Shown one piece after another: positions 18,465 to 63,128 of a stretch of DNA of 64,000 nucleotides. This stretch comes from Takakia lepidozioides (taxonomy: Eukaryota > Plantae > Bryophyta), in contig CM060732.1 in NCBI GenBank assembly GCA_030704615.1, forward strand, positions 80,662,001 to 80,726,000, written 5' to 3'. The notes under the pieces are model-generated. The model saw only the letters and a list, made by a program, of their open reading frames with translations, searched no databases and was not told where the DNA came from. Position 1 is the stretch's first letter. Each line of letters starts with the position of its first letter. The position numbers were made by a program, and so were the translations under genes.

Positions 18465-19712
18465 TTGCAATGGGAAGGAGCCCGATCTTCTTATATGGTG
18501 CAGCACGAATCTGAGTGGGAAGAGGCCACCACGTCGGAAGATATCGCGTGGTATGATTCGGATGATAATAACCGTGCTCCATTGGTAAAGAAGGACCTCT
18601 ATCAAACCTTGAATTTGAACACAGCTGCTGAGCCCAATGACATTATAATTTCTGCGGCAATCCCATCAAATGAATTGTCTATGTGGAAGGAATTCTTCCA
18701 GAAACATCGTACGGCTTTTGCATGGACCTATACTGATCTTCGGGGTGTACCCCCAAAAATTTGCCAGCATCGCATTATATTGGAGGAAAGAGCAATGCCA
18801 GTACGGCAACGCCAACATCGATTGAATCATAAATATTCTTTGTTGGTTAAAGAAGTGTTGGACAAATTGTTAACTGATGTATTCATTTATCCTGTACCTT
18901 ATAGCGATTGGGTATCGCCTATAGTGGTTGTGCCCAAGAAACAATCAGACAAAGTACGAATTTGTAAGGATTTTCGGAAACTTAATGCCGTGACTCGGAA
19001 GGATTATTTTCCATTACCTTTCACTGATATTATTTTGGATGCAGTAGCGGGCCATGAGTGTTATTCCTTCCTCGATGGTTTTTCTGGTTATAATCAGATC
19101 ACGATCGCAGAAGAGGATCGGCCCAAGACTACTTTTACCACCGATTGGGGCACTTATGCCTATAAAATCATGCCCTTCGGACTTTACAATGCTCCTGCTA
19201 CGTTTCAACGCGTGATGACTGCCGTCTTTCAGGATTACTTGCGTCTATTTATGGAGATCTTCTTGGATGATTTTTGTGTCTATAGCAACAAAGCAACACA
19301 TGCTGAGATGTTGGAGCTATGCTTTCAAAAATGTAAGGAGTATGGGATCTCCCTGAATGTAGGAAAATGTCAATTTTTGGTTACCAAGGGGAAGCTTTTA
19401 GGCCATATTGTATCAATTCGAGGGATATCGACTGATCCCACCAAGATTGAGATTATTGTCCAATTACCTACCCCCACGACAGTGACAGAGGTGTATGTCT
19501 TTTTGGCCATGTGGGGTACTATCGCCGCTTTATCCGTCAATATGCTGAGATTGCCCTACCATTGACGCAATTATTGAAACACGATGCCGAGCAACAGTGG
19601 ACAAAGGAATGTCAACATTCTTTTCAAGAATTAAAATGGCGATTGATAAAGGCGCCTATCTCGATTTCCCCCGATTGGACTAAGGAGTTTCAGGTCTATG
19701 TGGATGCTTCAA
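18465..19712 (+). mobile_element. Ty3/Gypsy (non-chromovirus-like) pol fragment: RT plus start of RNase H, frameshifted
   Basis: FAWTYTDLRG, WVSPIVVVPKK, DFRKLN, FLDGFSGYNQI, MPFGLYNAPATFQR, FLDDF, LLGHIVS. Frameshift near 19500, then GYYRRFI..EFQVYVDAS, cut off at about 19712. Confidence 0.92.
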
Positions 19713-35465: not shown

Positions 35466-35475
35466 TATATATATA
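35466..35475 (+). promoter_or_regulatory. Candidate TATA box of the peptide-precursor gene
   Basis: TATATATATA about 290 bp upstream of the ATG at 35759. Confidence 0.35.
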
Positions 35476-35758
35476 CATAAGCGAGGATCCATGCTACTCC
35501 ATCATTCCAATTTCCCAACGCCGATCTCAGACATCGACACAAGGAAGAGCCTCACGTACTGCCAGAAGTACGAGATTGTGCACTGGTACTGACAACTTGA
35601 CATTGACGTGCAGCAGCTGAGAGCGCGAAATTTATAGAAAGAGATTCATCTGATTGTGAAGAGATACTCGAGTGGGAGGATCTGGGATAGAGAGGAGGAA
35701 GGTTGTAGGTGGGTTTTCTGTTCTGCTGTTGCAGGGATTCGTTCAGCTGGAGGTGGGT

Positions 35759-37747
35759 ATGAAGTGTTCTGTCATTATGCGGAAAACGGTGTGGTCGGCT
35801 GTTCTGTTGCTCATGCTCATCTTCTGCCCCAATGTACTCTGTGCTCGTGCCCGGTTTCTTCCCGCCCCGACAGGTGAACCCTCTATACTTCTCAACAGTC
35901 TGCAAGGCTTTGGGAATCCGACTCCTGTCAGCCAGGGGCATATGGGCTCAATGAATCTGTTTATGCCGGATGGCGAGATCCTGAGAAAAGCTTCAGTTCC
36001 CCCTTCAACATCATGGCCTTTTCCCCCTGCGACTACTCGTGGCTATGGAGGAGACGAAGTAGCAGCTGAAAAGTTGAGCACTGGAGAACATACCAAAAAA
36101 CCAGCCATGGACCTGTTGGCCATGAAGGCGGGCGGATCACCGAGCAAGGGCGGAAATCATATCACGGCGGACCAGAAGTCTGGCACTCCCAGTAAGGGTG
36201 GGAACTCTGTTGGAGCGATGATGGAGCAGAAATCTGGCACTCCCAGTAAGGGTGGAAACTCTGTTGGAGTGACGATGGAGCAGAAGTCTGGCACTCCCAG
36301 TAAGGGTGGCAACTCTGTTGGAGAGCAGAAGTCCGGCACTCCAAGTAAGGGTGGAAACTCTGTGGGAGTGACGATGGAGCAGAAGTCTGGCACTCCCAGT
36401 AAGGGTGGAAACTCTGTTGGAGTGACGATGGAGCAGAAGTCTGGCACTCCCAGTAAGGGTGGCAACGCTGCTCTCACAGTGGGTGAGAAGAAGTCAGGTG
36501 CCCCTGGCAATGGTGGCAACGCTGCTCCCGCAGTTGGTGAGAAGAAGTCAGGCACCCCGAGCAAGGGTGGTAACGCCCAGGTCGCGATGGACCAGAAGTT
36601 GCGGTCTCTGGAAACTGCTCTCAGCAAGGGTTCATCCGGACCTTCCTCAGGGACTCCCAGTCCCATCCACAACGTTCAGGAAAACGGTTTTGCCAAGAGC
36701 ACACAAACATCTCCCTCAGGGACCCCTAGTGCTATTCACAACGAGCAGGTGGCCGCCGGATTGGACGTTCCTGAGCAGCTCTTTGGAATTGCCCTGCCAG
36801 TGGTGGAGTCAAAGGCTGCAGGCTCAGGCTCACCTTCAAATGGCCACAACTCTCCGTCATCTTTCGAGAGGCTTTCGAAAACTTCACCCCATGGATCATC
36901 GGGGACGCCTTCCTCCGGCCATAATTCCATTCCTACAACGGTGGAATCTAAGGTGGGCTCACATTTCAATGTTCTTTCCAAGACTTCACCCACTGGATCG
37001 TCGGGAACTCCTTCCAAAAGCCATAATTCAGTTCCTACAGTGGAGGAAACTAAGGTGAGCTCCTCTTTCAATGTTTTATCCAAGACTTCACCCACTGGAT
37101 CGTCGGGAACTCCTTCCAAAAGCCATAATTCACTTCCTACAGTGGAGGAAAATAAGGTGGGCTCCTCTTCCAACGTTTTCTCCAAGACTTCACCCACTGG
37201 ATCGTCGGGAACTCCTTCCAAAAGCCATAATTCACTTCCTACAGTGGAGGAAGCTAAGGTGGGCTCCTCTTTCAATGTTTTCTCCAAAACCTCACCTCCT
37301 GGATCGTCAGGGACGCCGTCCACCGGGCATAACTCCATTCCTACAACGGAGGAATCTAAGGTAGGCTCATCTTTGAATGTTCTCTCCAAGACTTCACCCA
37401 CTGGATCGTCGGGAACTCCTTCCAAAGGCCATAATTCAGTTCCTACAACGGAGGAATCTAATGTGGGGTCATCTTCCGACATTTTCTCCAAGCCTTCACC
37501 TTCCCAGAGCCACAGCTCAATTTCCACGAGCACGGAGATGAAGTCTGACTCAGTCCTGCATGAGTACAGTGCAGTTGATCACATGGATCGTGGTCGGAGT
37601 TTAAGTGAACACCTGAGTATGATAGTTGAAGGTCATAAGGCAGAGGAGAGGAACACTGAGAGACTCGTGGGGTGTGGATCCGATACGAATTTACAGCTGC
37701 TTGGGTTCGGACCAAGAAAAGATCTCGTCTCCAACCTCTTCCATTGA
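35759..37747 (+). CDS. Secreted multi-repeat peptide precursor (IDA/IDL-like polyprotein), 662 aa, intronless
   Basis: First in-frame ATG at 35759 gives a signal-peptide-like N-terminus (MKCSVIMRKTVWSAVLLLMLIFCPNVLCA). It is followed by 9 units ending in GGN (7 exact SGTPSKGGN) and 9 units ending in HN (e.g. FNVLSKTSPTGSSGTPSKSHN), separated by spacers that often contain Glu. The ORF is uninterrupted. Confidence 0.85.
   Translation: MKCSVIMRKTVWSAVLLLMLIFCPNVLCARARFLPAPTGEPSILLNSLQGFGNPTPVSQGHMGSMNLFMPDGEILRKASVPPSTSWPFPPATTRGYGGDEVAAEKLSTGEHTKKPAMDLLAMKAGGSPSKGGNHITADQKSGTPSKGGNSVGAMMEQKSGTPSKGGNSVGVTMEQKSGTPSKGGNSVGEQKSGTPSKGGNSVGVTMEQKSGTPSKGGNSVGVTMEQKSGTPSKGGNAALTVGEKKSGAPGNGGNAAPAVGEKKSGTPSKGGNAQVAMDQKLRSLETALSKGSSGPSSGTPSPIHNVQENGFAKSTQTSPSGTPSAIHNEQVAAGLDVPEQLFGIALPVVESKAAGSGSPSNGHNSPSSFERLSKTSPHGSSGTPSSGHNSIPTTVESKVGSHFNVLSKTSPTGSSGTPSKSHNSVPTVEETKVSSSFNVLSKTSPTGSSGTPSKSHNSLPTVEENKVGSSSNVFSKTSPTGSSGTPSKSHNSLPTVEEAKVGSSFNVFSKTSPPGSSGTPSTGHNSIPTTEESKVGSSLNVLSKTSPTGSSGTPSKGHNSVPTTEESNVGSSSDIFSKPSPSQSHSSISTSTEMKSDSVLHEYSAVDHMDRGRSLSEHLSMIVEGHKAEERNTERLVGCGSDTNLQLLGFGPRKDLVSNLFH
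36125..36574 (+). repeat. Coding tandem repeat, mostly 54 bp (18 aa) units: KSGTPSKGGN
   Basis: Repeated CAGAAGTCTGGCACTCCCAGTAAGGGTGG; one unit is shortened to 45 bp in frame. Confidence 0.95.
36863..37435 (+). repeat. Coding tandem repeat, 102 bp (34 aa) x about 6: F..LSKTSPTGSSGTPSKSHN
   Basis: CCATAATT recurs at 37021 and 37123 (102-bp period); the units are near-identical. Confidence 0.95.
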
Positions 37748-39050: not shown

Positions 39051-39058
39051 GTGATTTC

Positions 39059-39142
39059 TGTCAGCAGTGGGGTTCGAACCCACGCCCCCTTACGAAGACC
39101 AGAACTTGAGTCTGGCGCCTTAGACCACTCGGCCATGCTGAC
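39059..39142 (-). tRNA. trnL-CAA: tRNA-Leu (anticodon CAA)
   Basis: Minus strand GTCAGCATGGCCGAGTGGTCTAAGGCGCCAGACTCAAGTTCTGGTCTTCGTAAGGGGGCGTGGGTTCGAACCCCACTGCTGACA: perfect acceptor stem, TTCGAA T-loop, long variable arm. Confidence 0.97.
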
Positions 39143-39148
39143 ATTAAG

Positions 39149-54032: not shown

Positions 54033-57000
54033 TCAACGATTCTTCCACTTTTGAGGTCGCCCTTCGAAAACTGCAACCGCCTCAGATGCGTTTCTCAATT
54101 CTGAGGCACGCACCCAAGTTGCCTCCACTTGATGATAACCCTTCCATTTCACGAGATACTCTGTTTCTCGATTCTTGAACCTCCTCGACTTAAGCACTGC
54201 CTCCACCTCGTACTCAGGTTCATTTTCATGATCCAACAGCACAAGTGGCGGACGCAACACTTGATGTCGATTCGGACGTGCTTCATCTTTGAAGTAAGGC
54301 GTCAAAAAGGAGACATGGAATACCGGATGCACCTTGTTGTTTGCCAGCAGCTCCAATTCATACACATCCTCATTCATAACCTTCCGGATGCGAAAGAGCC
54401 CCGCATACGGAGGTACGAACTTCGGACTCACTTCCGGAGGTAGTCGAAAATTCTTGATGTTCAACCAGACCTCCATGCCTGCCTCAAACTTAACTTCCCT
54501 CTGTTTCTGATTCGTCTGCCGTCCATACCGTTTCTTAGCTTTGGCAATGTTGTATTTTGCAAGCTTCAACAAACGTTCGCGTTCTTCCAGCACCGCTGCT
54601 GCTGCCGGTTCCTCAATGTCCTGGGCGGCCCAACTTGTCGGCACCAGAGGTGCTTTTCCATAGACCAATACGGAAGGGGAAACTCCCGTTGCAGAGTGTT
54701 TTGTGTTATTATAACAGAACTCTGCCGCATCCAAATGCTCTGATTGGTCTGCCGACACATAATTCCGCAAGATCTGCTTCACCACGGAATTCACTCTTTC
54801 CGTTTGGCCGTCCGTCGTAGGTCGGAAGGCGGTGCTCATCTTGAGCCCCGTCCCCATTTTCTTCCAAAGTGCCCTCCAAAATTTACTTGTAAACTTTGGA
54901 TCGTGGTCCGAGATAATATCCTTCGGAAATCCATGATGCTTGAAGACATGGGCGAAATAAAGTCGTTTCGTCTTCTACGCTTGTCGTCTTCTACGCCATC
55001 GCCATCGCCGTCTCCTTGGTGGGAATGAAATGGCCCATTTTACTGAACCTATTCACCACCACCATGATTGCATCGAATCCTTTTGACAGCGGCATAACAG
55101 TCATGAAATCCATCGAGACACTTTCCCAAGACCCCTCTGGAATCGGCAAGGGTTGTAACAGCCCCGCTTGCTTTTTGTACTCGCTCCGGTTTTGTTGGCA
55201 TGTGGTGCATGTCTTGACATACTCCTCGGCCTCCTCCCTCAGTTTGGGCCAGAAATACTCTTTCTTCAAGAGTGTCGCGGTGCGTTTGGCTCCGCCGTGG
55301 CCCGCAAACGGGCCATCGTAGCATTCTTTCAGGAGATTATTTCTGATCCCTCCCTTCGACACGTAGAGGCGCTTTGGCTTGTACCGGAGCAGTCCATTGT
55401 GCAAGTGGAACTGCGATTTAACCCCCATCCTCAACACGGACTTCGCCATCTCATCCTTCCGGTAAGCCTTTCGGATCTTCCTTTGGAGCGTCGTCTCGCC
55501 TTTGTATACCAACATGAGCTACTGCTTTCTACTTAAAACATCGGCCACCACATTGTCCCGTCCCGGTTTGTACTGGATATCCACGTCGAACACCGCCAAA
55601 GTGTCTTGCCACCTAAGTTATTTTGGGGACAACTTAGGCTGCGTGGCAAAATACTTCACCGTGACATTGTCCGTGAACACCTTCACCGGGTTGGAACCAA
55701 CATAGTGGCGCCAAAGCTCAAGGCAATGCACCACCGCCTTCATTTTTTTCTCGTGCGTAGGCCACCGTCGCTCCACTTCATTCAGTTTCTTACTTTTGTA
55801 AGCCACTAGACGTCTATCCTGCATGAGTACACCCCCAATTGCGAAGTCCGACACATTTGTATGAATCTCAAATGGATGGTCGAACTCCGGGATTTTCAGG
55901 ACTGGAGCTTTCGCCATCCGCTGCTTCAACTCGGCAAAAGTTTGGCCACAAAAGGTGTTCCATACCCATACCTTGGACTTACACAAAAGGTTTGACAGCG
56001 GCCCTGCGATCTTGGCGAAATTTCTCATATACTTTCAGTAATAGGAGGCGAGTCCTAGGAAGGATCGCACTCCCGGGACCGAAGTCGGAGGCTCCCAGTC
56101 CAATATCACCCTCACCTTTCTGTCATCCATTTTGATCCCATCCTATGTAATCACATGCCCTAGGAACTCCACTTTTGTTACCCCGAATTTGCACTTTGAA
56201 GCTTTGGCATACAGCTTCACTTCTCGCAATTTCTGGAACACCCTTTTGAGGTGCTCCAAGTGCTCTTCCTTCGTTTTCGAATACACCAAGATGTCATCAA
56301 TGTACACGATCACAAAGTCATCCAACTACACCTGGAAAAGGCTGTTCATTAGCGTGCTAAAGGTCGCGGGTGCATTGGTGAGCCCAAAAGGCATCACCAA
56401 GAACTCATACGAACCATATCTTGTCCTGCACGCGATCTTCTCCTCAGCTCCTTTCGCCACTCGGATTTGATGGTAGCCGGAGCGCAAATCGATCCAGCTG
56501 AAATACTTCGCTCCTGCCAACCGATCGAAGAGGTCGTCGATCCTTGGCAAAGGGTACCGGTTTTTTATAGTCACCTTATTCAGCGCCCTGTAATCGACAC
56601 ACATCCGCAACGTCCCATCCTTCTTGTCTGCGAATAGCACCGGGGCTCCGTAAGGTGACTTACTCGGCCGGATGTACCCCTTTGACATTAGATCCTTGAG
56701 TTGGGCCTTCAGCTCGTCCAACTCTCTGTGGCTCAACCGGTAGGGCGCCTTGGCAGGCGGCTCCGATCCTGCATCACCTCTATCTTGTGGTCAACTCCTC
56801 TTCGCGGTGGCAAGCCGCTTGGTAAATCCTCCGGCATCACATCTTGGTATTTCTCCAAGATCCCCTTGATTCAATCTGGGCTCGGTTCCCTATCGACTTC
56901 TCCTTCCACTTGTCTTACATAAAGCAAAAACTGGGGCTCGTGTGGCTCTTCCACGACCCACTTCTTTGCTGACAGCAGGTTTATTCGCCCTCCCACTCGG

Positions 57001-57400
57001 TTGGGCGTTTCCGATACCTGTAAAACTTTGCCACCATTCCCACACGGTAGCGTGACTATTCTCTTGCGGCCATCTATAACCGCTCCGGATTTGCTCAGAA
57101 AAGTCATCCCCAAAATGAGATACACTCCATCGATCTCGCAAATGGTGAAGTTCTCACGTCCCTCCAACTCCCCGAGCTGAAGAGGAACTTCGAACACCAA
57201 CCTCGTCGCCAATTGTGGTTCTTCTTTGGCAGAACGCACCTCAATAGAGGCCCCCACATCACTTATCGGGAGCCCCAGCTTCTGTGCCGTTGCCGGTATC
57301 ATGAAGGAGTGCGACGCTCCTGGGGAATTGAACTTCCCAACCCGGTTCCGCAAGAATGTTGGGGTCATTGTATATGTCCCAACAAAGTTCGCGCCTGGCC
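54033..57400 (-). mobile_element. Degenerate Ty3/Gypsy chromovirus pol: protease-RT-RNase H-integrase-chromodomain
   Basis: GASHSF..LILGMTFL (protease); [46 protein letters not shown] (RT); SDFAIGGVLMQ (RNase H); GHGG..CTTCQ, SMDF, TDGQTERVN (integrase); YEVEAVL..YLVKWKGY..ATW (chromodomain). Several stops and frameshifts. Confidence 0.95.
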
Positions 57401-57908
57401 CCTTTTGGTTTTTTTTTTGGAGGTCCAGATTCATTATCATCATCCCTGGGATGACCTCCTCTGTCTTCCTCCTCCGCCATTTATGGCTCTGGCTTACCCC
57501 TACTCGACAGGTGTTTGCTAAGAACAATGCTCTCCCAACCCTCCTAAATCGTACCTAATCCTACTCCCTAATGAATCCTCCCCAAGTACTAGAGGCACGT
57601 GTCACTCCCTCCGCAGTTTTAAGTGATATGACGCAATGTGCAATGAAAAAAATGTGGGTGCCAGAGGAGAGCTTCCCGGGAGGTACTTAGCATCGATTTC
57701 GTAGAAACTAACGGCCCAAAATACCCCCCACCCAACCAATAGCACCCCTCTCCACTTGGACTCAATGACAAGGAATGCAACATCCCATCGCCCACCAAGT
57801 CCTGGTGTGGAGAAAAGTGAGGGAGAGAATGGCCTCCAAGGCCTTATAAGCCCCTCCTCCACACTCGGGGCGCGCGTTGTCATCATGACTGCGCACGTTA
57901 GTAATAGC

Positions 57909-59853: not shown

Positions 59854-61845
59854 TCATCTGATGGTTCGACTCGCAGAAGTCCCGCAACAGAAGAAGCATC
59901 TCCCAGGATCGGAGTAGCAAGATGGAGCGGCGTGAGATGAAGCACGGTTCATAGGAGCACGATATCGGTGAAGGAATGACAACGGCCTGTTGTCATCATC
60001 CGACGATTCGACTTGCACATCTCCCGCAGTCCGTGGAACTCGTGAAGGGGGAGAGTTGACCTCAATTTCATTGTTGAAAGTGTGCTCCACTGGGGGAAGG
60101 GGGTCCGCAATTGGGATGACACCATGTCGCAGTTCATCAACAACAAGGTCATCGAAGGATGGATGCATTGCAGCATCATCGTCATTAAATTCATATGGGT
60201 CATGTGGAGGATTGCCCACATCATCGGACCCATCCCAACCGTTGGAGTCGGAGTCCCTCGTGGCGTCGGTGTCATCATTGCTGCTAGATTGGACCTCTGA
60301 GGCAGATTCTTCAAACAACAGATTCTTCTTGTACCATGCAGATGCGTCACTTGCTGTCCTCTCTCGCAGTAGCCTACAATTCGTGTAGACATAAACCAAT
60401 TTGTCAGCCCTGACAAGATTCAACCTGTTGCGAATCTTGTTGTAAACAAACGAGTTCGTGCTCCAGTTCCGCTCACAGGACGAGGCAGAGCACACTTGAG
60501 CAAAAATACGTTTTGCAATGGGAGCTAATGTTCTTGCTCCAGCTCCAATCGGATCCCACCATTCATGTGGCAACATGTTCATTGCTTTTGGATCCGACAT
60601 GTCATGGAAAGGATTTCTGGCGATCCGAGAAGCACTGATACTCGGACAAAGCTCGCTCTGTCATGTTCAAGGGCGCGAGTTGCATGATGACCCGTACAAG
60701 CCCGGCGTTGATATCCACATCGTCTCTCAAATCTGTATTGTCCAGCAAGAATGGATTCAGCAAGCCCCCGCATAATGCAAGTCTGTGCGAACCATCCGTT
60801 TGCGGTCGTAAAATGCATCCTCGGTCCTTGCCGCCAAATCATCGTCCATAGAAAATGGAGGACACCTCAAGGATTGCACATTTTCCAATATCAACCATGC
60901 TTTACCCATTATTGGTTGTTTTCCATCAAACTCCCGCAAAGCAATCAACACCGGCTCCACCATGTACACAAAATTTGCACATTTCGCCCAGAAATCGTCG
61001 GAGCGAATGATTGCGCGGACCCTCCGACTTTTGTTCAAAGACTTGGACTTACGAGATTCGCGTAAGGTGCCCACATACGCATCCCATTGAGAGTCAATGA
61101 TCACCTGCTCCTGACCCGCCCTCACAGTCACCAATCGCTTTGTAGCAAAGCGGGTTTCACCCGGGTTCCTAAGGCTGTATTTGGGTTCATGTTTTCTAAA
61201 CAATGCCAGAGGGATGTGATGTGTACGAATGAACGTCACAACCGACTTTGCCCTTTTTACTAGTTGTTTCATCCATGATTCTTTTCCCTAATCCTCCAAA
61301 ATGAGATTAAAGATATGAGCAGCACACCCTTGGTAATATAGATGGGGATATCGTACCATCAAAATATCGGCGATATTAACCATGTTAGATGCATTGTCTG
61401 TGCACACTTGGACAATTTTATTAGCTCCAATTTTATCGATGAAACTTGTCAACAACCCTGCTTGATAACGTGCATCTTTTCTCTCCCCGCTTGTGTCAAC
61501 GGATCCCAAAAATTGTTCCCCCGCAGGACAGACCAGCATGACATTGAACAGTGGTCGATTAGTAACAGAACTCCAACTGTCCGCACATATAGTGCTTCCA
61601 TGTTTCCGGAGAGAATCACCTGTCTTTTCATTCACCTTTTGGGTGAGGTCAGACATAGCCTCTTCTAGCAATCATGTGCGGAGATCGCGATAACTCGGAG
61701 GTGTGTATGTGGACTTGGAATCGGACGTGGCTTTGACAGTAGCCACAAACGCAGGAAGCCTCGAGACATTGAACGGAATATTGGCCTCGTAGAAAAATTG
61801 GGCCCACTTCTTATCCAGAGTCCTCCTGTGCGACAAATTTAAGCT
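59854..61845 (-). mobile_element. Degenerate hAT transposase (DUF659 plus hAT dimerisation domain)
   Basis: TICADSWS..RPLFNVM..FLGSVDTSGE..IVQVCTDNASNM..CAAHIFNLILED; PGETRFAT; WW..LAPIAKRIFAQVCSASSCERNWS. Broken by stops and frameshifts. Confidence 0.92.
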
Positions 61846-62628
61846 GTCAAGTTAAATAAGCACAGTGTGAAAACAGCTAGAATAAAACTAGTTATTTGTA
61901 TTTAACACTTGGATTTAGGTCAAGTGTTAAATCAGGTGTCAAGTTTAGTTTGACACCTGGTCCGTCTTATCTTCACGAGAGCGGCAGTCGCGCAGCTCAT
62001 CTCTCTCGAGTTGAGCTGCGCGCGACCGAGCTCCTGCATCGTTAGAGTGTGCTTATGATGGGAGTGTAGGTTGTTGTGGGGTGGAGTCCCCATAGCTTGG
62101 GGTGCCCCTGGCTCGACTGTTATTTTAAAGAGTGATGCTGTTGGATTCATGTTGTTTCTTGTGTGAACAGTGTGTCCTTAGCTTTCTTATCACTCGAGAG
62201 AGATGAACGCTATCTAGTTTTCTAGTGCTAAGCTAGATACAATGTTTGTTTTAGCACTATTATAATATATATTGGGGCAGGAGTCCATTGGCCCTGCTGT
62301 TGCCATGGGTATGCGCTTGTTGTTTCACACATTGCGTTGGTGGTGATGGTGTAGTCATCCCTGTTTGTGGTGGCGGGTGCGCGCAGGGGCCCTGGCAGCT
62401 CTGGCCTGAGCGCTGGGGCAGGCTGAGCACCCAGTAGGCCAGTCGTGCCCAACTTGTGTGGTCATTTGTGTTGCAGCTCAAGAAGGGCCATTGGCTTGTA
62501 GCCCATTCTGGCTTGCAAGCATATTGCTGGATTCACCGTGCCCTGTAGAGACTCGCTGCCAGCGTACAGGAAAGGTAGTCGGAGGAGGCAGTAGGTCGTG
62601 GGCCTTCTCCACTTTTTCCTGAATGGGA

Positions 62629-63128
62629 NNNNNNNNNNNNNNNNNNNNNNNNNNNNNNNNNNNNNNNNNNNNNNNNNNNNNNNNNNNNNNNNNNNNNNNN
62701 NNNNNNNNNNNNNNNNNNNNNNNNNNNNNNNNNNNNNNNNNNNNNNNNNNNNNNNNNNNNNNNNNNNNNNNNNNNNNNNNNNNNNNNNNNNNNNNNNNNN
62801 NNNNNNNNNNNNNNNNNNNNNNNNNNNNNNNNNNNNNNNNNNNNNNNNNNNNNNNNNNNNNNNNNNNNNNNNNNNNNNNNNNNNNNNNNNNNNNNNNNNN
62901 NNNNNNNNNNNNNNNNNNNNNNNNNNNNNNNNNNNNNNNNNNNNNNNNNNNNNNNNNNNNNNNNNNNNNNNNNNNNNNNNNNNNNNNNNNNNNNNNNNNN
63001 NNNNNNNNNNNNNNNNNNNNNNNNNNNNNNNNNNNNNNNNNNNNNNNNNNNNNNNNNNNNNNNNNNNNNNNNNNNNNNNNNNNNNNNNNNNNNNNNNNNN
63101 NNNNNNNNNNNNNNNNNNNNNNNNNNNN
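62629..63128. other. Assembly gap (500 N)
   Basis: Run of 500 N characters. Confidence 1.

What the first reader, a model, noticed from the sequence alone, without database searches (positions are those of the whole stretch)
35759..37747. Secreted polyprotein encoding a tandem array of IDA-like peptides
Seen: a signal-peptide-like N-terminus followed by nine HN-terminated units, six of them in a 34-aa repeat. Known: the Arabidopsis IDA EPIP region is FGYLPKGVPIPPSAPSKRHN, the mature peptide is cut after the Lys by subtilases, and it binds HAE/HSL LRR-RKs through its C-terminal HN. The repeat FNVLSKTSPTGSSGTPSKSHN keeps the F..L.K..P...S..PSK.HN skeleton with one extra residue, including the Lys at the cleavage position, which predicts 15-mers such as TSPTGSSGTPSKSHN. 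Inference: this is a multi-copy IDA/IDL-type prohormone releasing many ligand variants from one transcript. Canonical IDA precursors are short and single-domain; multi-domain precursors are familiar for CLE and CEP, but I do not know of one for IDA.
Basis: partly seen in the sequence, partly recalled or inferred. Interest (0 to 1): 0.9.

Follow-up and report, generated by a model that had tools for sequence, protein, structure and literature searches.

The report
Moss polyprotein of 18 IDA-like peptides
An unannotated, intron-free plant (apparently moss) gene encodes a secreted protein with 18 tandem copies of a short, strongly conserved peptide core ending in asparagine, which looks like a multi-copy precursor of IDA/CLE-type signalling peptides, though expression, cleavage and receptor binding are untested.

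Summary
Window 35759-37747 (+) is one 662-codon ORF. It has a signal-peptide-like start, nine 'KSGTPSKGGN' units and nine HN-ending units, six of them 34 aa apart. All 18 units share S-G-T-P-S-x-x-[G/H]-N.

The cores are under purifying selection in this frame, unlike the spacers:
- GGN cores show 0 nonsynonymous and 10 synonymous changes, spacers 10 and 3.
- HN cores have dN/dS 0.18, spacers 1.14.
- 'SGTPSK' is identical between the two arrays although 7 of 18 nucleotides differ.

So this is very probably a real gene for a secreted repeat protein. The best reading is a polyprotein precursor of Asn-terminated peptides.

IDA membership is not shown. Likeness to Arabidopsis IDA is within the reach of composition-matched shuffles (4-19%). 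The cores read SGTPS, not SGPS, and lack (R/K)(R/K)HN.

The closest match is a moss motif, P***TPSPGHN, published for a 140-aa Physcomitrium candidate. Unit 10 meets 7 of its 8 positions (0 of 20,000 shuffles).

No homologue turned up in any protein or metagenome search. The scan had also noted the GGN class separately on this same stretch.

The parts
35759..37747 (+). Complete intron-free CDS of 662 codons plus stop, for a secreted tandem-repeat protein
   Evidence: ORF list and translation. It is the only frame open across both arrays and the unique segments. pN/pS is 0.48 in this frame and 0.67-1.53 in the other five.
35759..35851 (+). Signal-peptide-like N-terminus (aa 1-31): basic n-region MKCSVIMRK, hydrophobic core aa 9-28, A-R-A before the likely cut
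   Evidence: Kyte-Doolittle scan: the only 15-aa windows above 1.5 lie at aa 5-31. AF2 models a helix at aa 3-27. SignalP was not available, so the cut site is inferred.
35852..36121 (+). Non-repetitive pro-region (aa 32-121)
   Evidence: Translation. No Pfam match. pLDDT below 50.
36122..36574 (+). GGN array: nine units (aa 122-272), each a conserved 12-mer E-[Q/K]-K-S-G-T-P-S-K-G-G-N followed by a variable spacer of 3-6 aa (15- or 18-aa period)
   Evidence: Core: 0 nonsynonymous and 10 synonymous changes. Spacer: 10 and 3. Fisher p = 4e-4. pS 0.37, pN 0.
36620..36850 (+). Three divergent HN units (units 10-12; aa 288-364): LSK|GSSGPSSGTPSPIHN, FAK|STQTSPSGTPSAIHN, ESK|AAGSGSPSNGHN
   Evidence: Unit 10 matches MpIDA1 in its last six residues, PSPIHN. 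It also meets 7 of 8 positions of the moss motif P***TPSPGHN.
36851..37435 (+). HN array: six units at 34-aa spacing (aa 365-559). Each has a 13-aa spacer, then F-N-V-L-S-K, then the 15-mer T-S-P-T-G-S-S-G-T-P-S-K-S-H-N
   Evidence: TRF period 102 nt, 6.1 copies. Core dN/dS 0.18 against 1.14 for the spacer. Core 3 nonsynonymous and 8 synonymous changes, spacer 9 and 3, p = 0.04.
37436..37744 (+). One decayed unit (..DIFSKPSPSQSHS, no HN) and a non-repetitive C-terminal tail (aa 560-662)
   Evidence: Translation. The tail is not hydrophobic, so there is no GPI-type signal. One low-confidence helix at aa 615-626.
35466..35479 (+). TATA-like element (TATATATATACATA) about 280 nt upstream of the ATG; a possible core promoter, inferred only
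   Evidence: Read directly from the sequence. No transcript data.

Best explanation
This is a real, intron-free nuclear gene of a land plant; earlier notes of this scan call the genome a moss. It encodes a secreted, intrinsically disordered polyprotein.

Proposed mechanism: after the signal peptide is removed, the pro-protein is cut in the secretory pathway or apoplast. The likely enzymes are subtilases cutting after the conserved Lys (..L-S-K| in the HN units, ..E-Q-K| or before E-Q-K in the GGN units). Trimming then proceeds back to the invariant Asn. This would release up to 18 peptides of 9-15 residues in two classes, ..SGTPSK-GGN and ..SGTPSx-xHN. Each carries a Pro, probably hydroxylated, five residues before a free C-terminal Asn. 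Such peptides would act as ligands of LRR receptor kinases of subfamily XI (HSL/CLV1/TDR-like), in the manner of IDA and CLE.

Shown here: the ORF, the repeat anatomy, frame-specific purifying selection on the cores, the hydrophobic N-terminus, and the motif match to a published moss peptide candidate. Inferred: secretion, hydroxylation, cleavage sites, release of peptides and the receptor class.
For: - A 662-aa ORF spans two unrelated arrays and three unique segments in one frame.
- All 18 units keep G(-7), P(-5) and N(0). S(-8) and S(-4) are kept in 17 of 18 units and T(-6) in 15 of 18.
- Cores are constrained and spacers are not: GGN core 0 nonsynonymous and 10 synonymous changes against 10 and 3 in the spacer (p = 4e-4); HN core 3 and 8 against 9 and 3 (p = 0.04). 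NG86 dN/dS is 0.18 for the core and 1.14 for the spacer.
- SGTPSK is identical between the arrays although 7 of 18 nt differ, including a Ser AGT/TCC switch. Only 11 of 300,000 random 7-hit mutants keep it.
- Spacer length varies (3-6 aa) while core length is fixed.
- Lys sits at -15 in 8 of 9 HN units, including divergent ones.
- None of the 35 Asn lies in an N-X-S/T sequon; 8.7 are expected and 0 of 5000 shuffles go as low.
- There is a single N-terminal hydrophobic segment and no other.
- Pro at -5 and a free terminal Asn are the two contacts that matter most in the HAESA-IDA structure (PMC4848090).
- A GN ending occurs in MpCLE1, and PSPIHN in MpIDA1 (PMC8462819).
- Unit 10 meets 7 of 8 positions of the moss motif P***TPSPGHN; 0 of 20,000 shuffles do.
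- Multi-motif precursors are known in the related families: PIP2, PIP3 and PIPL1 have two motifs and CEP9 has five.
Against:
- No orthologue or paralogue was retrieved by any search, so core-versus-spacer conservation across species is untested.
- Constraint on the cores would also be expected for a repeated functional or glycosylation motif in an uncut protein.
- No conserved basic or otherwise recognisable site follows the Asn (next residue S, A, V, E or H), so C-terminal release is unexplained.
- 18 copies in 662 aa is far outside known plant LRR-RK ligand precursors.
- Likeness to AtIDA is not beyond composition-matched chance.
- AF2 places weak beta strands (pLDDT 50-65) on the FNVLSK segments.
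Confidence: 0.5

Rival explanations
1. The product is a secreted but uncut Ser/Gly/Thr/Pro-rich repeat glycoprotein, for example a mucin- or AGP-like wall, mucilage or spore-coat component. Under this reading the SGTPS motif is a hydroxylation and O-glycosylation module, or a binding module, rather than a released peptide.
For: Composition is S 18.6%, G 12.4%, T 8.4%, P 8.1%. Every Pro follows S, T, V, L or I, contexts known to favour prolyl hydroxylation (own knowledge of the Hyp-contiguity rules). The protein is predicted disordered. Its nearest neighbours in the Atlas feature search are wall-protein-like clusters, at non-significant scores of 0.77-0.79. No recognisable cleavage site follows the Asn. 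Purifying selection on the cores fits this reading too.
Against: Pro is only 8% and P+A+S+T only 40%. There are no SPPP or AP/SP-rich glycomodules, no Tyr or Cys cross-link motifs and no GPI-type tail. Selection keeps an exact 9-12-mer ending in an invariant Asn rather than a composition. The core matches a short moss peptide-precursor motif. Sequons are entirely avoided.
Confidence: 0.3
2. The HN array folds into a beta-rich repeat domain, a solenoid or stacked hairpins built on the FNVLSK segments. The protein would then act as a folded extracellular scaffold.
For: AF2 in single-sequence mode puts strands on HFNVLSKT and on ..HNS.. with 34-residue periodicity, at pLDDT 50-65.
Against: Confidence is low: mean pLDDT 42, pTM 0.34, and no residue reaches 90. 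AF2 tends to stack any tandem repeat (own knowledge). The GGN array, with the same core, is modelled as coil. The FNVLSK linker is less constrained than the core, with 3 nonsynonymous and 4 synonymous changes.
Confidence: 0.07
3. The stretch is not a working gene: an unexpressed or recently dead ORF kept open by its minisatellite-like repeats.
For: No annotated homologue was found among 15 billion proteins and there is no transcript evidence. Repeat arrays also give long ORFs in other frames.
Against: Only one of the six frames shows a synonymous excess. The SGTPSK core is kept across 7 of 18 nt changes. The frame stays open through about 900 nt of unique sequence and begins with a signal-peptide-like segment. 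Recent loss of function cannot be excluded, but the history is that of a coding gene.
Confidence: 0.08

Closest known systems
Physcomitrium patens SSP candidate STRG.12453.1_ORF.5, motif P***TPSPGHN (bioRxiv 10.1101/2024.05.13.593875)
   Same: Both carry the T-P-S-x-x-H-N core, with Thr before the Pro. Unit 10 (PSSGTPSPIHN) meets 7 of the 8 specified positions, and units 13, 17 and 18 meet 6 of 8. Both come from a moss, both have a predicted signal peptide, and both are unannotated. The authors report the motif in four moss species and describe it as similar to CLE and IDA.
   Different: That candidate is a 140-aa precursor described by a single motif; here there are 18 cores in 662 aa, and half of them end in GGN.
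IDA/IDL peptides (AtIDA PIPPSAPSKRHN; Marchantia MpIDA1 EVPPQGPSPIHN)
   Same: Both are secreted precursors with Pro five residues before a C-terminal His-Asn. PSK.HN is shared with AtIDA and PSPIHN with MpIDA1. The F..L.K upstream element has Lys where subtilases cut AtIDA (the cleavage site is from own knowledge of Schardon et al. 2016).
   Different: The core reads SGTPS instead of SGPS. There is no (R/K)(R/K) before HN, and half the units end in GGN. There are 18 units instead of one, in 662 aa against 77-100 aa. The similarity is not beyond composition-matched chance.
CLE peptides and multi-domain CLE precursors (for example MpCLE1 HKNPAGPNPIGN)
   Same: Both are 12-residue Pro-containing cores ending in Asn, and the GN ending is shared with MpCLE1. 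Precursors with several CLE domains exist in rice, Medicago and cyst nematodes (own knowledge).
   Different: The G-P-x-P-[LI] CLE signature is absent. Best scores against CLE 12-mers are at chance.
PIP2/PIP3/PIPL1 (two SGPS motifs) and CEP9 (five CEP motifs)
   Same: These are multi-motif precursors within the IDA/PIP/CEP group of HSL-clade ligands.
   Different: Those peptides end in GxGH rather than Asn, and they carry 2-5 motifs rather than 18.
Hydroxyproline-rich systemin (HypSys) polyprotein precursors of Solanaceae
   Same: One secreted precursor yields several Hyp-containing signalling peptides (own knowledge).
   Different: The sequences are unrelated. HypSys peptides are Pro-rich and glycosylated, with 2-6 copies per precursor.

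Membership tests
IDA/IDL | N-terminal secretion signal | tested here: met
   One hydrophobic segment at aa 9-28 after a basic n-region, with A-R-A before the likely cut. This is heuristic only; SignalP was not available.
IDA/IDL | Short precursor (about 77-100 aa) with one C-terminal EPIP domain (Vie et al. 2015) | tested here: not met
   662 aa with 18 units.
IDA/IDL | Contiguous SGPS (or PS[GA]PS) core | tested here: not met
   The core is S-G-T-P-S in 15 of 18 units, with one extra residue between Gly and Pro.
IDA/IDL | Central Pro (Hyp64) five residues before the C-terminal Asn | tested here: met
   Pro at -5 and Asn at 0 in 18 of 18 units. The spacing is as in PIPPSA-Hyp-SKRHN. Hydroxylation itself is not testable here.
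IDA/IDL | (R/K)(R/K)HN tail | tested here: not met
   HN is present in 9 of 18 units. Lys at -3 occurs in 4 of the 9 HN units, and no unit has a basic residue at -2. MpIDA1 also lacks the basic pair (PIHN), so this feature may not define bryophyte members.
IDA/IDL | Sequence similarity beyond chance | tested here: inconclusive
   EPIP local score 37, reached by 4.3% of whole-protein shuffles and 0.07% of single-unit shuffles. The best 12-mer score against AtIDA is reached by 19% of shuffles and against MpIDA1 by 6.5%. No Pfam or sequence hit.
IDA/IDL | Binding to HAE/HSL ectodomains with a SERK co-receptor; release of a peptide ending in free Asn | not testable with these tools
   No receptor sequence of this species was at hand, and there are no peptidomics data.
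Moss TPSPGHN-type SSP candidates (Physcomitrium STRG.12453.1_ORF.5) | Motif P***TPSPGHN in a secreted precursor | tested here: met
   Unit 10 meets 7 of 8 positions and three more units meet 6 of 8. 0 of 20,000 shuffles reach 7 and 0.5% reach 6. Only the printed motif could be compared.
CLE | 12-13-aa CLE motif with G-P-x-P-[LI]-[HSG]-[NH] | tested here: not met
   There is no GPxP in any unit. Best scores against CLV3, MpCLE2, CLE41 and MpCLE1 are reached by 21-90% of shuffles.
PIP/CEP | C-terminal GxGH | tested here: not met
   All units end in Asn.
Arabinogalactan proteins / extensins (HRGPs) | P+A+S+T above about 50%, dense AP/SP/TP or SPPP modules, often a GPI signal | tested here: not met
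   PAST is 40% and Pro 8%. There is no SPPP and no hydrophobic C-terminus.

The most novel reading that the evidence does not exclude
This polyprotein is the missing ligand source for the moss HSL-clade receptor. IDA was reported absent from Physcomitrium even though an HSL-clade receptor is present, and those searches were limited to coding sequences under 300 aa (PMC8462819). On this reading, a bryophyte-type IDA lineage with a TPS..HN core has been amplified into an 18-unit precursor. It would deliver two ligand classes, HN-ended and GN-ended, from one transcript, making it the first multi-domain IDA-type prohormone.
Probability: 0.25. Interest if true: 0.85.

Novelty: new variant of a known kind. 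Interest (0 to 1): 0.62.

Why it matters
Peptide ligands of subfamily XI receptor kinases are hard to find outside flowering plants. Only about 10 residues are conserved, and searches usually discard long proteins. Mosses have HSL-clade receptors but no accepted IDA.

This gene carries 18 selectively maintained, Asn-ended, Pro-containing cores, and one of them nearly reproduces a motif seen in single-copy precursors of other mosses. It therefore offers concrete peptides to synthesise and test on moss receptors.

It would also show that plants can build high-copy neuropeptide-style polyproteins for this ligand class. If the protein is instead left uncut, it is a new kind of secreted repeat protein with an unusually exact motif.

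Tried and rejected
- Pfam scan of the whole protein at E up to 10 found nothing.
- The search for homologous proteins found nothing with the whole protein, the HN block aa 365-600, or aa 275-392 at E up to 10.
- Exhaustive phmmer against 1.84 billion representatives gave six hits. All are unrelated repeat proteins, including a 2010-aa bacterial protease, matched through low-complexity periodicity. I rejected them.
- Exact look-ups of the protein and of the neighbouring PPR protein show they are not in the collection, so this genome's proteins are not indexed.
- The metagenome scan by protein found no relative.
- A degenerate DNA pattern for KSGTPSKGGN in metagenomes gave two hits, L001 and L002. 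Both are single chance matches inside unrelated ORFs, about the number expected.
- The ESM Atlas feature search gave scores of 0.77-0.79, below any useful level.
- The AF2 single-sequence model had mean pLDDT 42, too poor for fold search.
- No other copy of the motif lies elsewhere in the window in any frame.
- A full-text literature search for the exact cores found only the two papers already cited. Their supplements are not held.
- Rfam over 30-42 kb found only two tRNAs downstream.
- The species could not be identified. 'Moss' rests on earlier notes of this scan, supported only loosely by the PPR-DYW gene and the chromovirus in the window.
Full report
**Observation.** Window 35759-37747 (+) is a single open frame of 662 codons. 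It contains nine HN-ending units, with the Asn at aa 305, 328, 364, 389, 423, 457, 491, 525 and 559. The last six are exactly 34 aa apart. Tandem Repeats Finder reports a 102-nt array (6.1 copies, 36881-37500) and, upstream, a 54-nt array (36169-36470 and onward to 36576). The upstream array encodes nine further units ending in GGN (aa 122-272). When all 18 units are lined up on their terminal Asn they share S(-8) G(-7) T(-6) P(-5) S(-4) x x [G/H](-1) N(0). G(-7), P(-5) and N(0) are invariant.

**Is it a gene?** The two arrays keep several frames open, but only this frame runs through both arrays and about 900 nt of unique sequence. The other frames break at the array borders. Substitutions between repeat copies give an internal test.
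- Among the five regular 34-aa units, the 15-aa core has dN/dS 0.18 and the 13-aa spacer 1.14. The same DNA read in the other two forward frames gives ratios above 1. Of all six frames, only this one has pN/pS below 0.5.
- Counting minimal changes per codon column, HN cores have 3 nonsynonymous and 8 synonymous changes against 9 and 3 in spacers (p = 0.04). GGN cores have 0 and 10 against 10 and 3 in their spacers (p = 4e-4).
- The six residues SGTPSK are identical in the GGN and HN arrays although 7 of 18 nucleotides differ, including a switch between the two serine codon families. Only 11 of 300,000 random sets of 7 substitutions preserve the peptide.

Gene conversion cannot produce this pattern; selection on the translated product can. 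The history is that of a coding gene whose short cores matter and whose spacers do not.

**Secretion and general nature.**
- The only hydrophobic stretch is aa 9-28. It follows a basic start and precedes A-R-A. There is no second membrane segment and no hydrophobic C-terminus.
- AF2 without an alignment models the N-terminal helix and little else (mean pLDDT 42). It puts weak strands on the FNVLSK segments of the HN array.
- The protein is 18.6% Ser, 12.4% Gly, 8.4% Thr and 8.1% Pro. That is too poor in Pro for an arabinogalactan protein or an extensin.
- None of its 35 Asn lies in an N-X-S/T sequon, although 8.7 are expected and no shuffle in 5000 goes as low. Because the units are repeats, these are not 35 independent cases.

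**Relatives.**
- Pfam, two word-indexed searches, an exhaustive phmmer run over 1.84 billion representatives, a third search at E up to 10, two metagenome scans and the Atlas produced no relative. They returned only periodic low-complexity look-alikes.
- The genome's own proteins are not in the indexed collections.
- As a result there is no cross-species comparison and no expression evidence. These are the main gaps.

**Comparison with known peptides.**
- Santiago et al. (PMC4848090) show that HAESA reads a dodecamer. Its central Hyp lies five residues before a free C-terminal Asn, and a C-terminal extension abolishes binding. Every unit here has Pro at -5 and Asn at 0.
- Vie et al. (PMC4526919) define IDLs by SGPS followed by (R/K)(R/K)HN. 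Here the core is SGTPS, and no unit has the basic pair.
However, 4.3% of composition-preserving shuffles of the whole protein do as well. For 12-mers against AtIDA and MpIDA1 the figures are 19% and 6.5%. A Ser/Pro/Lys/His/Asn-rich protein easily yields PSK.HN.
- Two bryophyte comparisons are more telling. MpIDA1 ends in PSPIHN (PMC8462819), exactly as unit 10 does. A preprint from 2024 describes an unannotated, infection-induced 140-aa Physcomitrium precursor with the motif P***TPSPGHN, found in four mosses and judged 'similar to CLE and IDA'. Unit 10 (PSSGTPSPIHN) meets 7 of its 8 positions and three other units meet 6. No shuffle in 20,000 reaches 7. The extra Thr that breaks SGPS is thus part of a moss-wide motif.
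- A GN ending, as in the GGN class, is known from MpCLE1.

**Likely mechanism.** The constrained blocks have the size of mature ligands. In the GGN array the block is a 12-mer, E-[Q/K]-K-S-G-T-P-S-K-G-G-N, with spacers of 3-6 aa that vary in length. In the HN array it is F-N-V-L-S-K plus a 15-mer. A Lys lies 15 residues before the Asn in 8 of 9 HN units, even where the sequence in between differs. I therefore read the protein as a polyprotein precursor. It would be cut after that Lys, as subtilases cut AtIDA after Lys (own knowledge), then trimmed to the Asn and hydroxylated at Pro(-5). It would yield two classes of ligands for subfamily XI receptor kinases. Only the anatomy and the selection are shown; each biochemical step is inferred. 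I give this reading 0.5.

**Rivals.**
- An uncut secreted glycoprotein in which SGTPS is a modification or binding module (0.3). It explains the constraint and the lack of a clear site after Asn. It explains less well the exact, Asn-ended core and its match to a small-precursor motif.
- A folded beta-repeat domain (0.07). This rests only on a low-confidence model.
- An unexpressed or recently dead ORF (0.08). This runs against the frame-specific selection but cannot be excluded without RNA.

**Context and novelty.**
- Furumizu et al. found IDA in Marchantia, Anthoceros and Selaginella but not in Physcomitrium, although all four have HSL-clade receptors. Some of their searches were limited to coding sequences below 300 aa, and the 2024 screen kept ORFs below 200 aa. 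A 662-aa polyprotein would escape both.
- Multi-motif precursors are known for PIP (two motifs), CEP9 (five motifs) and CLE (own knowledge), but I found none for IDA-type cores.
- I class this as a new variant of a known kind.
- Earlier notes of this scan flag the GGN class on this same stretch (s1-461696). They also flag a second poly-peptide gene with SPSGPSPSGN units 27.8 kb before the window (s1-473497). I could not read that gene; if it is real, it would share the P-S-x-x-G-N frame and suggest a local family.
- The species is unknown to me. 'Moss' comes from those notes.

Noticed in passing
window 39058-39229 (-): Two adjacent tRNA-Leu genes, CAA at 39058-39143 and AAG at 39148-39229, lie only 4 nt apart and 1.3 kb downstream of the ORF. 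They may be a dicistronic tRNA pair.
   Followed up: partly
window 48188-51013 (+): An intron-free PLS-class PPR gene with E, E+ and DYW deaminase domains, 941 aa from the first ATG. It is a candidate organellar RNA-editing factor. The exact sequence is not in the protein collection.
   Followed up: partly
window 18465-19565 (+); 54033-57527 (-): Ty3/gypsy chromovirus remains: reverse transcriptase ORFs, an integrase SH3 and a chromodomain. The ORFs are broken into several pieces.
   Followed up: partly
window 59854-61272 (-): A fragment of a hAT-family transposase: the C-terminal dimerisation domain at 59854-60600, plus an adjacent ORF with no Pfam match.
   Followed up: partly
window about 62500-63100: An assembly gap (a run of N) of roughly 500-600 bases, seen as poly-X in ORF translations.
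   Followed up: no
about 27.8 kb before the window start (outside the window): An earlier first-reader note (s1-473497) reports a poly-peptide precursor with about eight tandem (V)SPSGPSPSGN motifs. It has the same P-S-x-x-G-N frame as the GGN units here and may be a paralogue. I could not read it with my tools.
   Followed up: no
window 36157-36672 (-) and 36736-37533 (-): Long antisense ORFs of 171 and 265 aa lie over the two arrays. They are by-products of the repeats: reverse frames show pN/pS of 0.67-1.38 and no signal of coding constraint comparable to the sense frame.
   Followed up: yes
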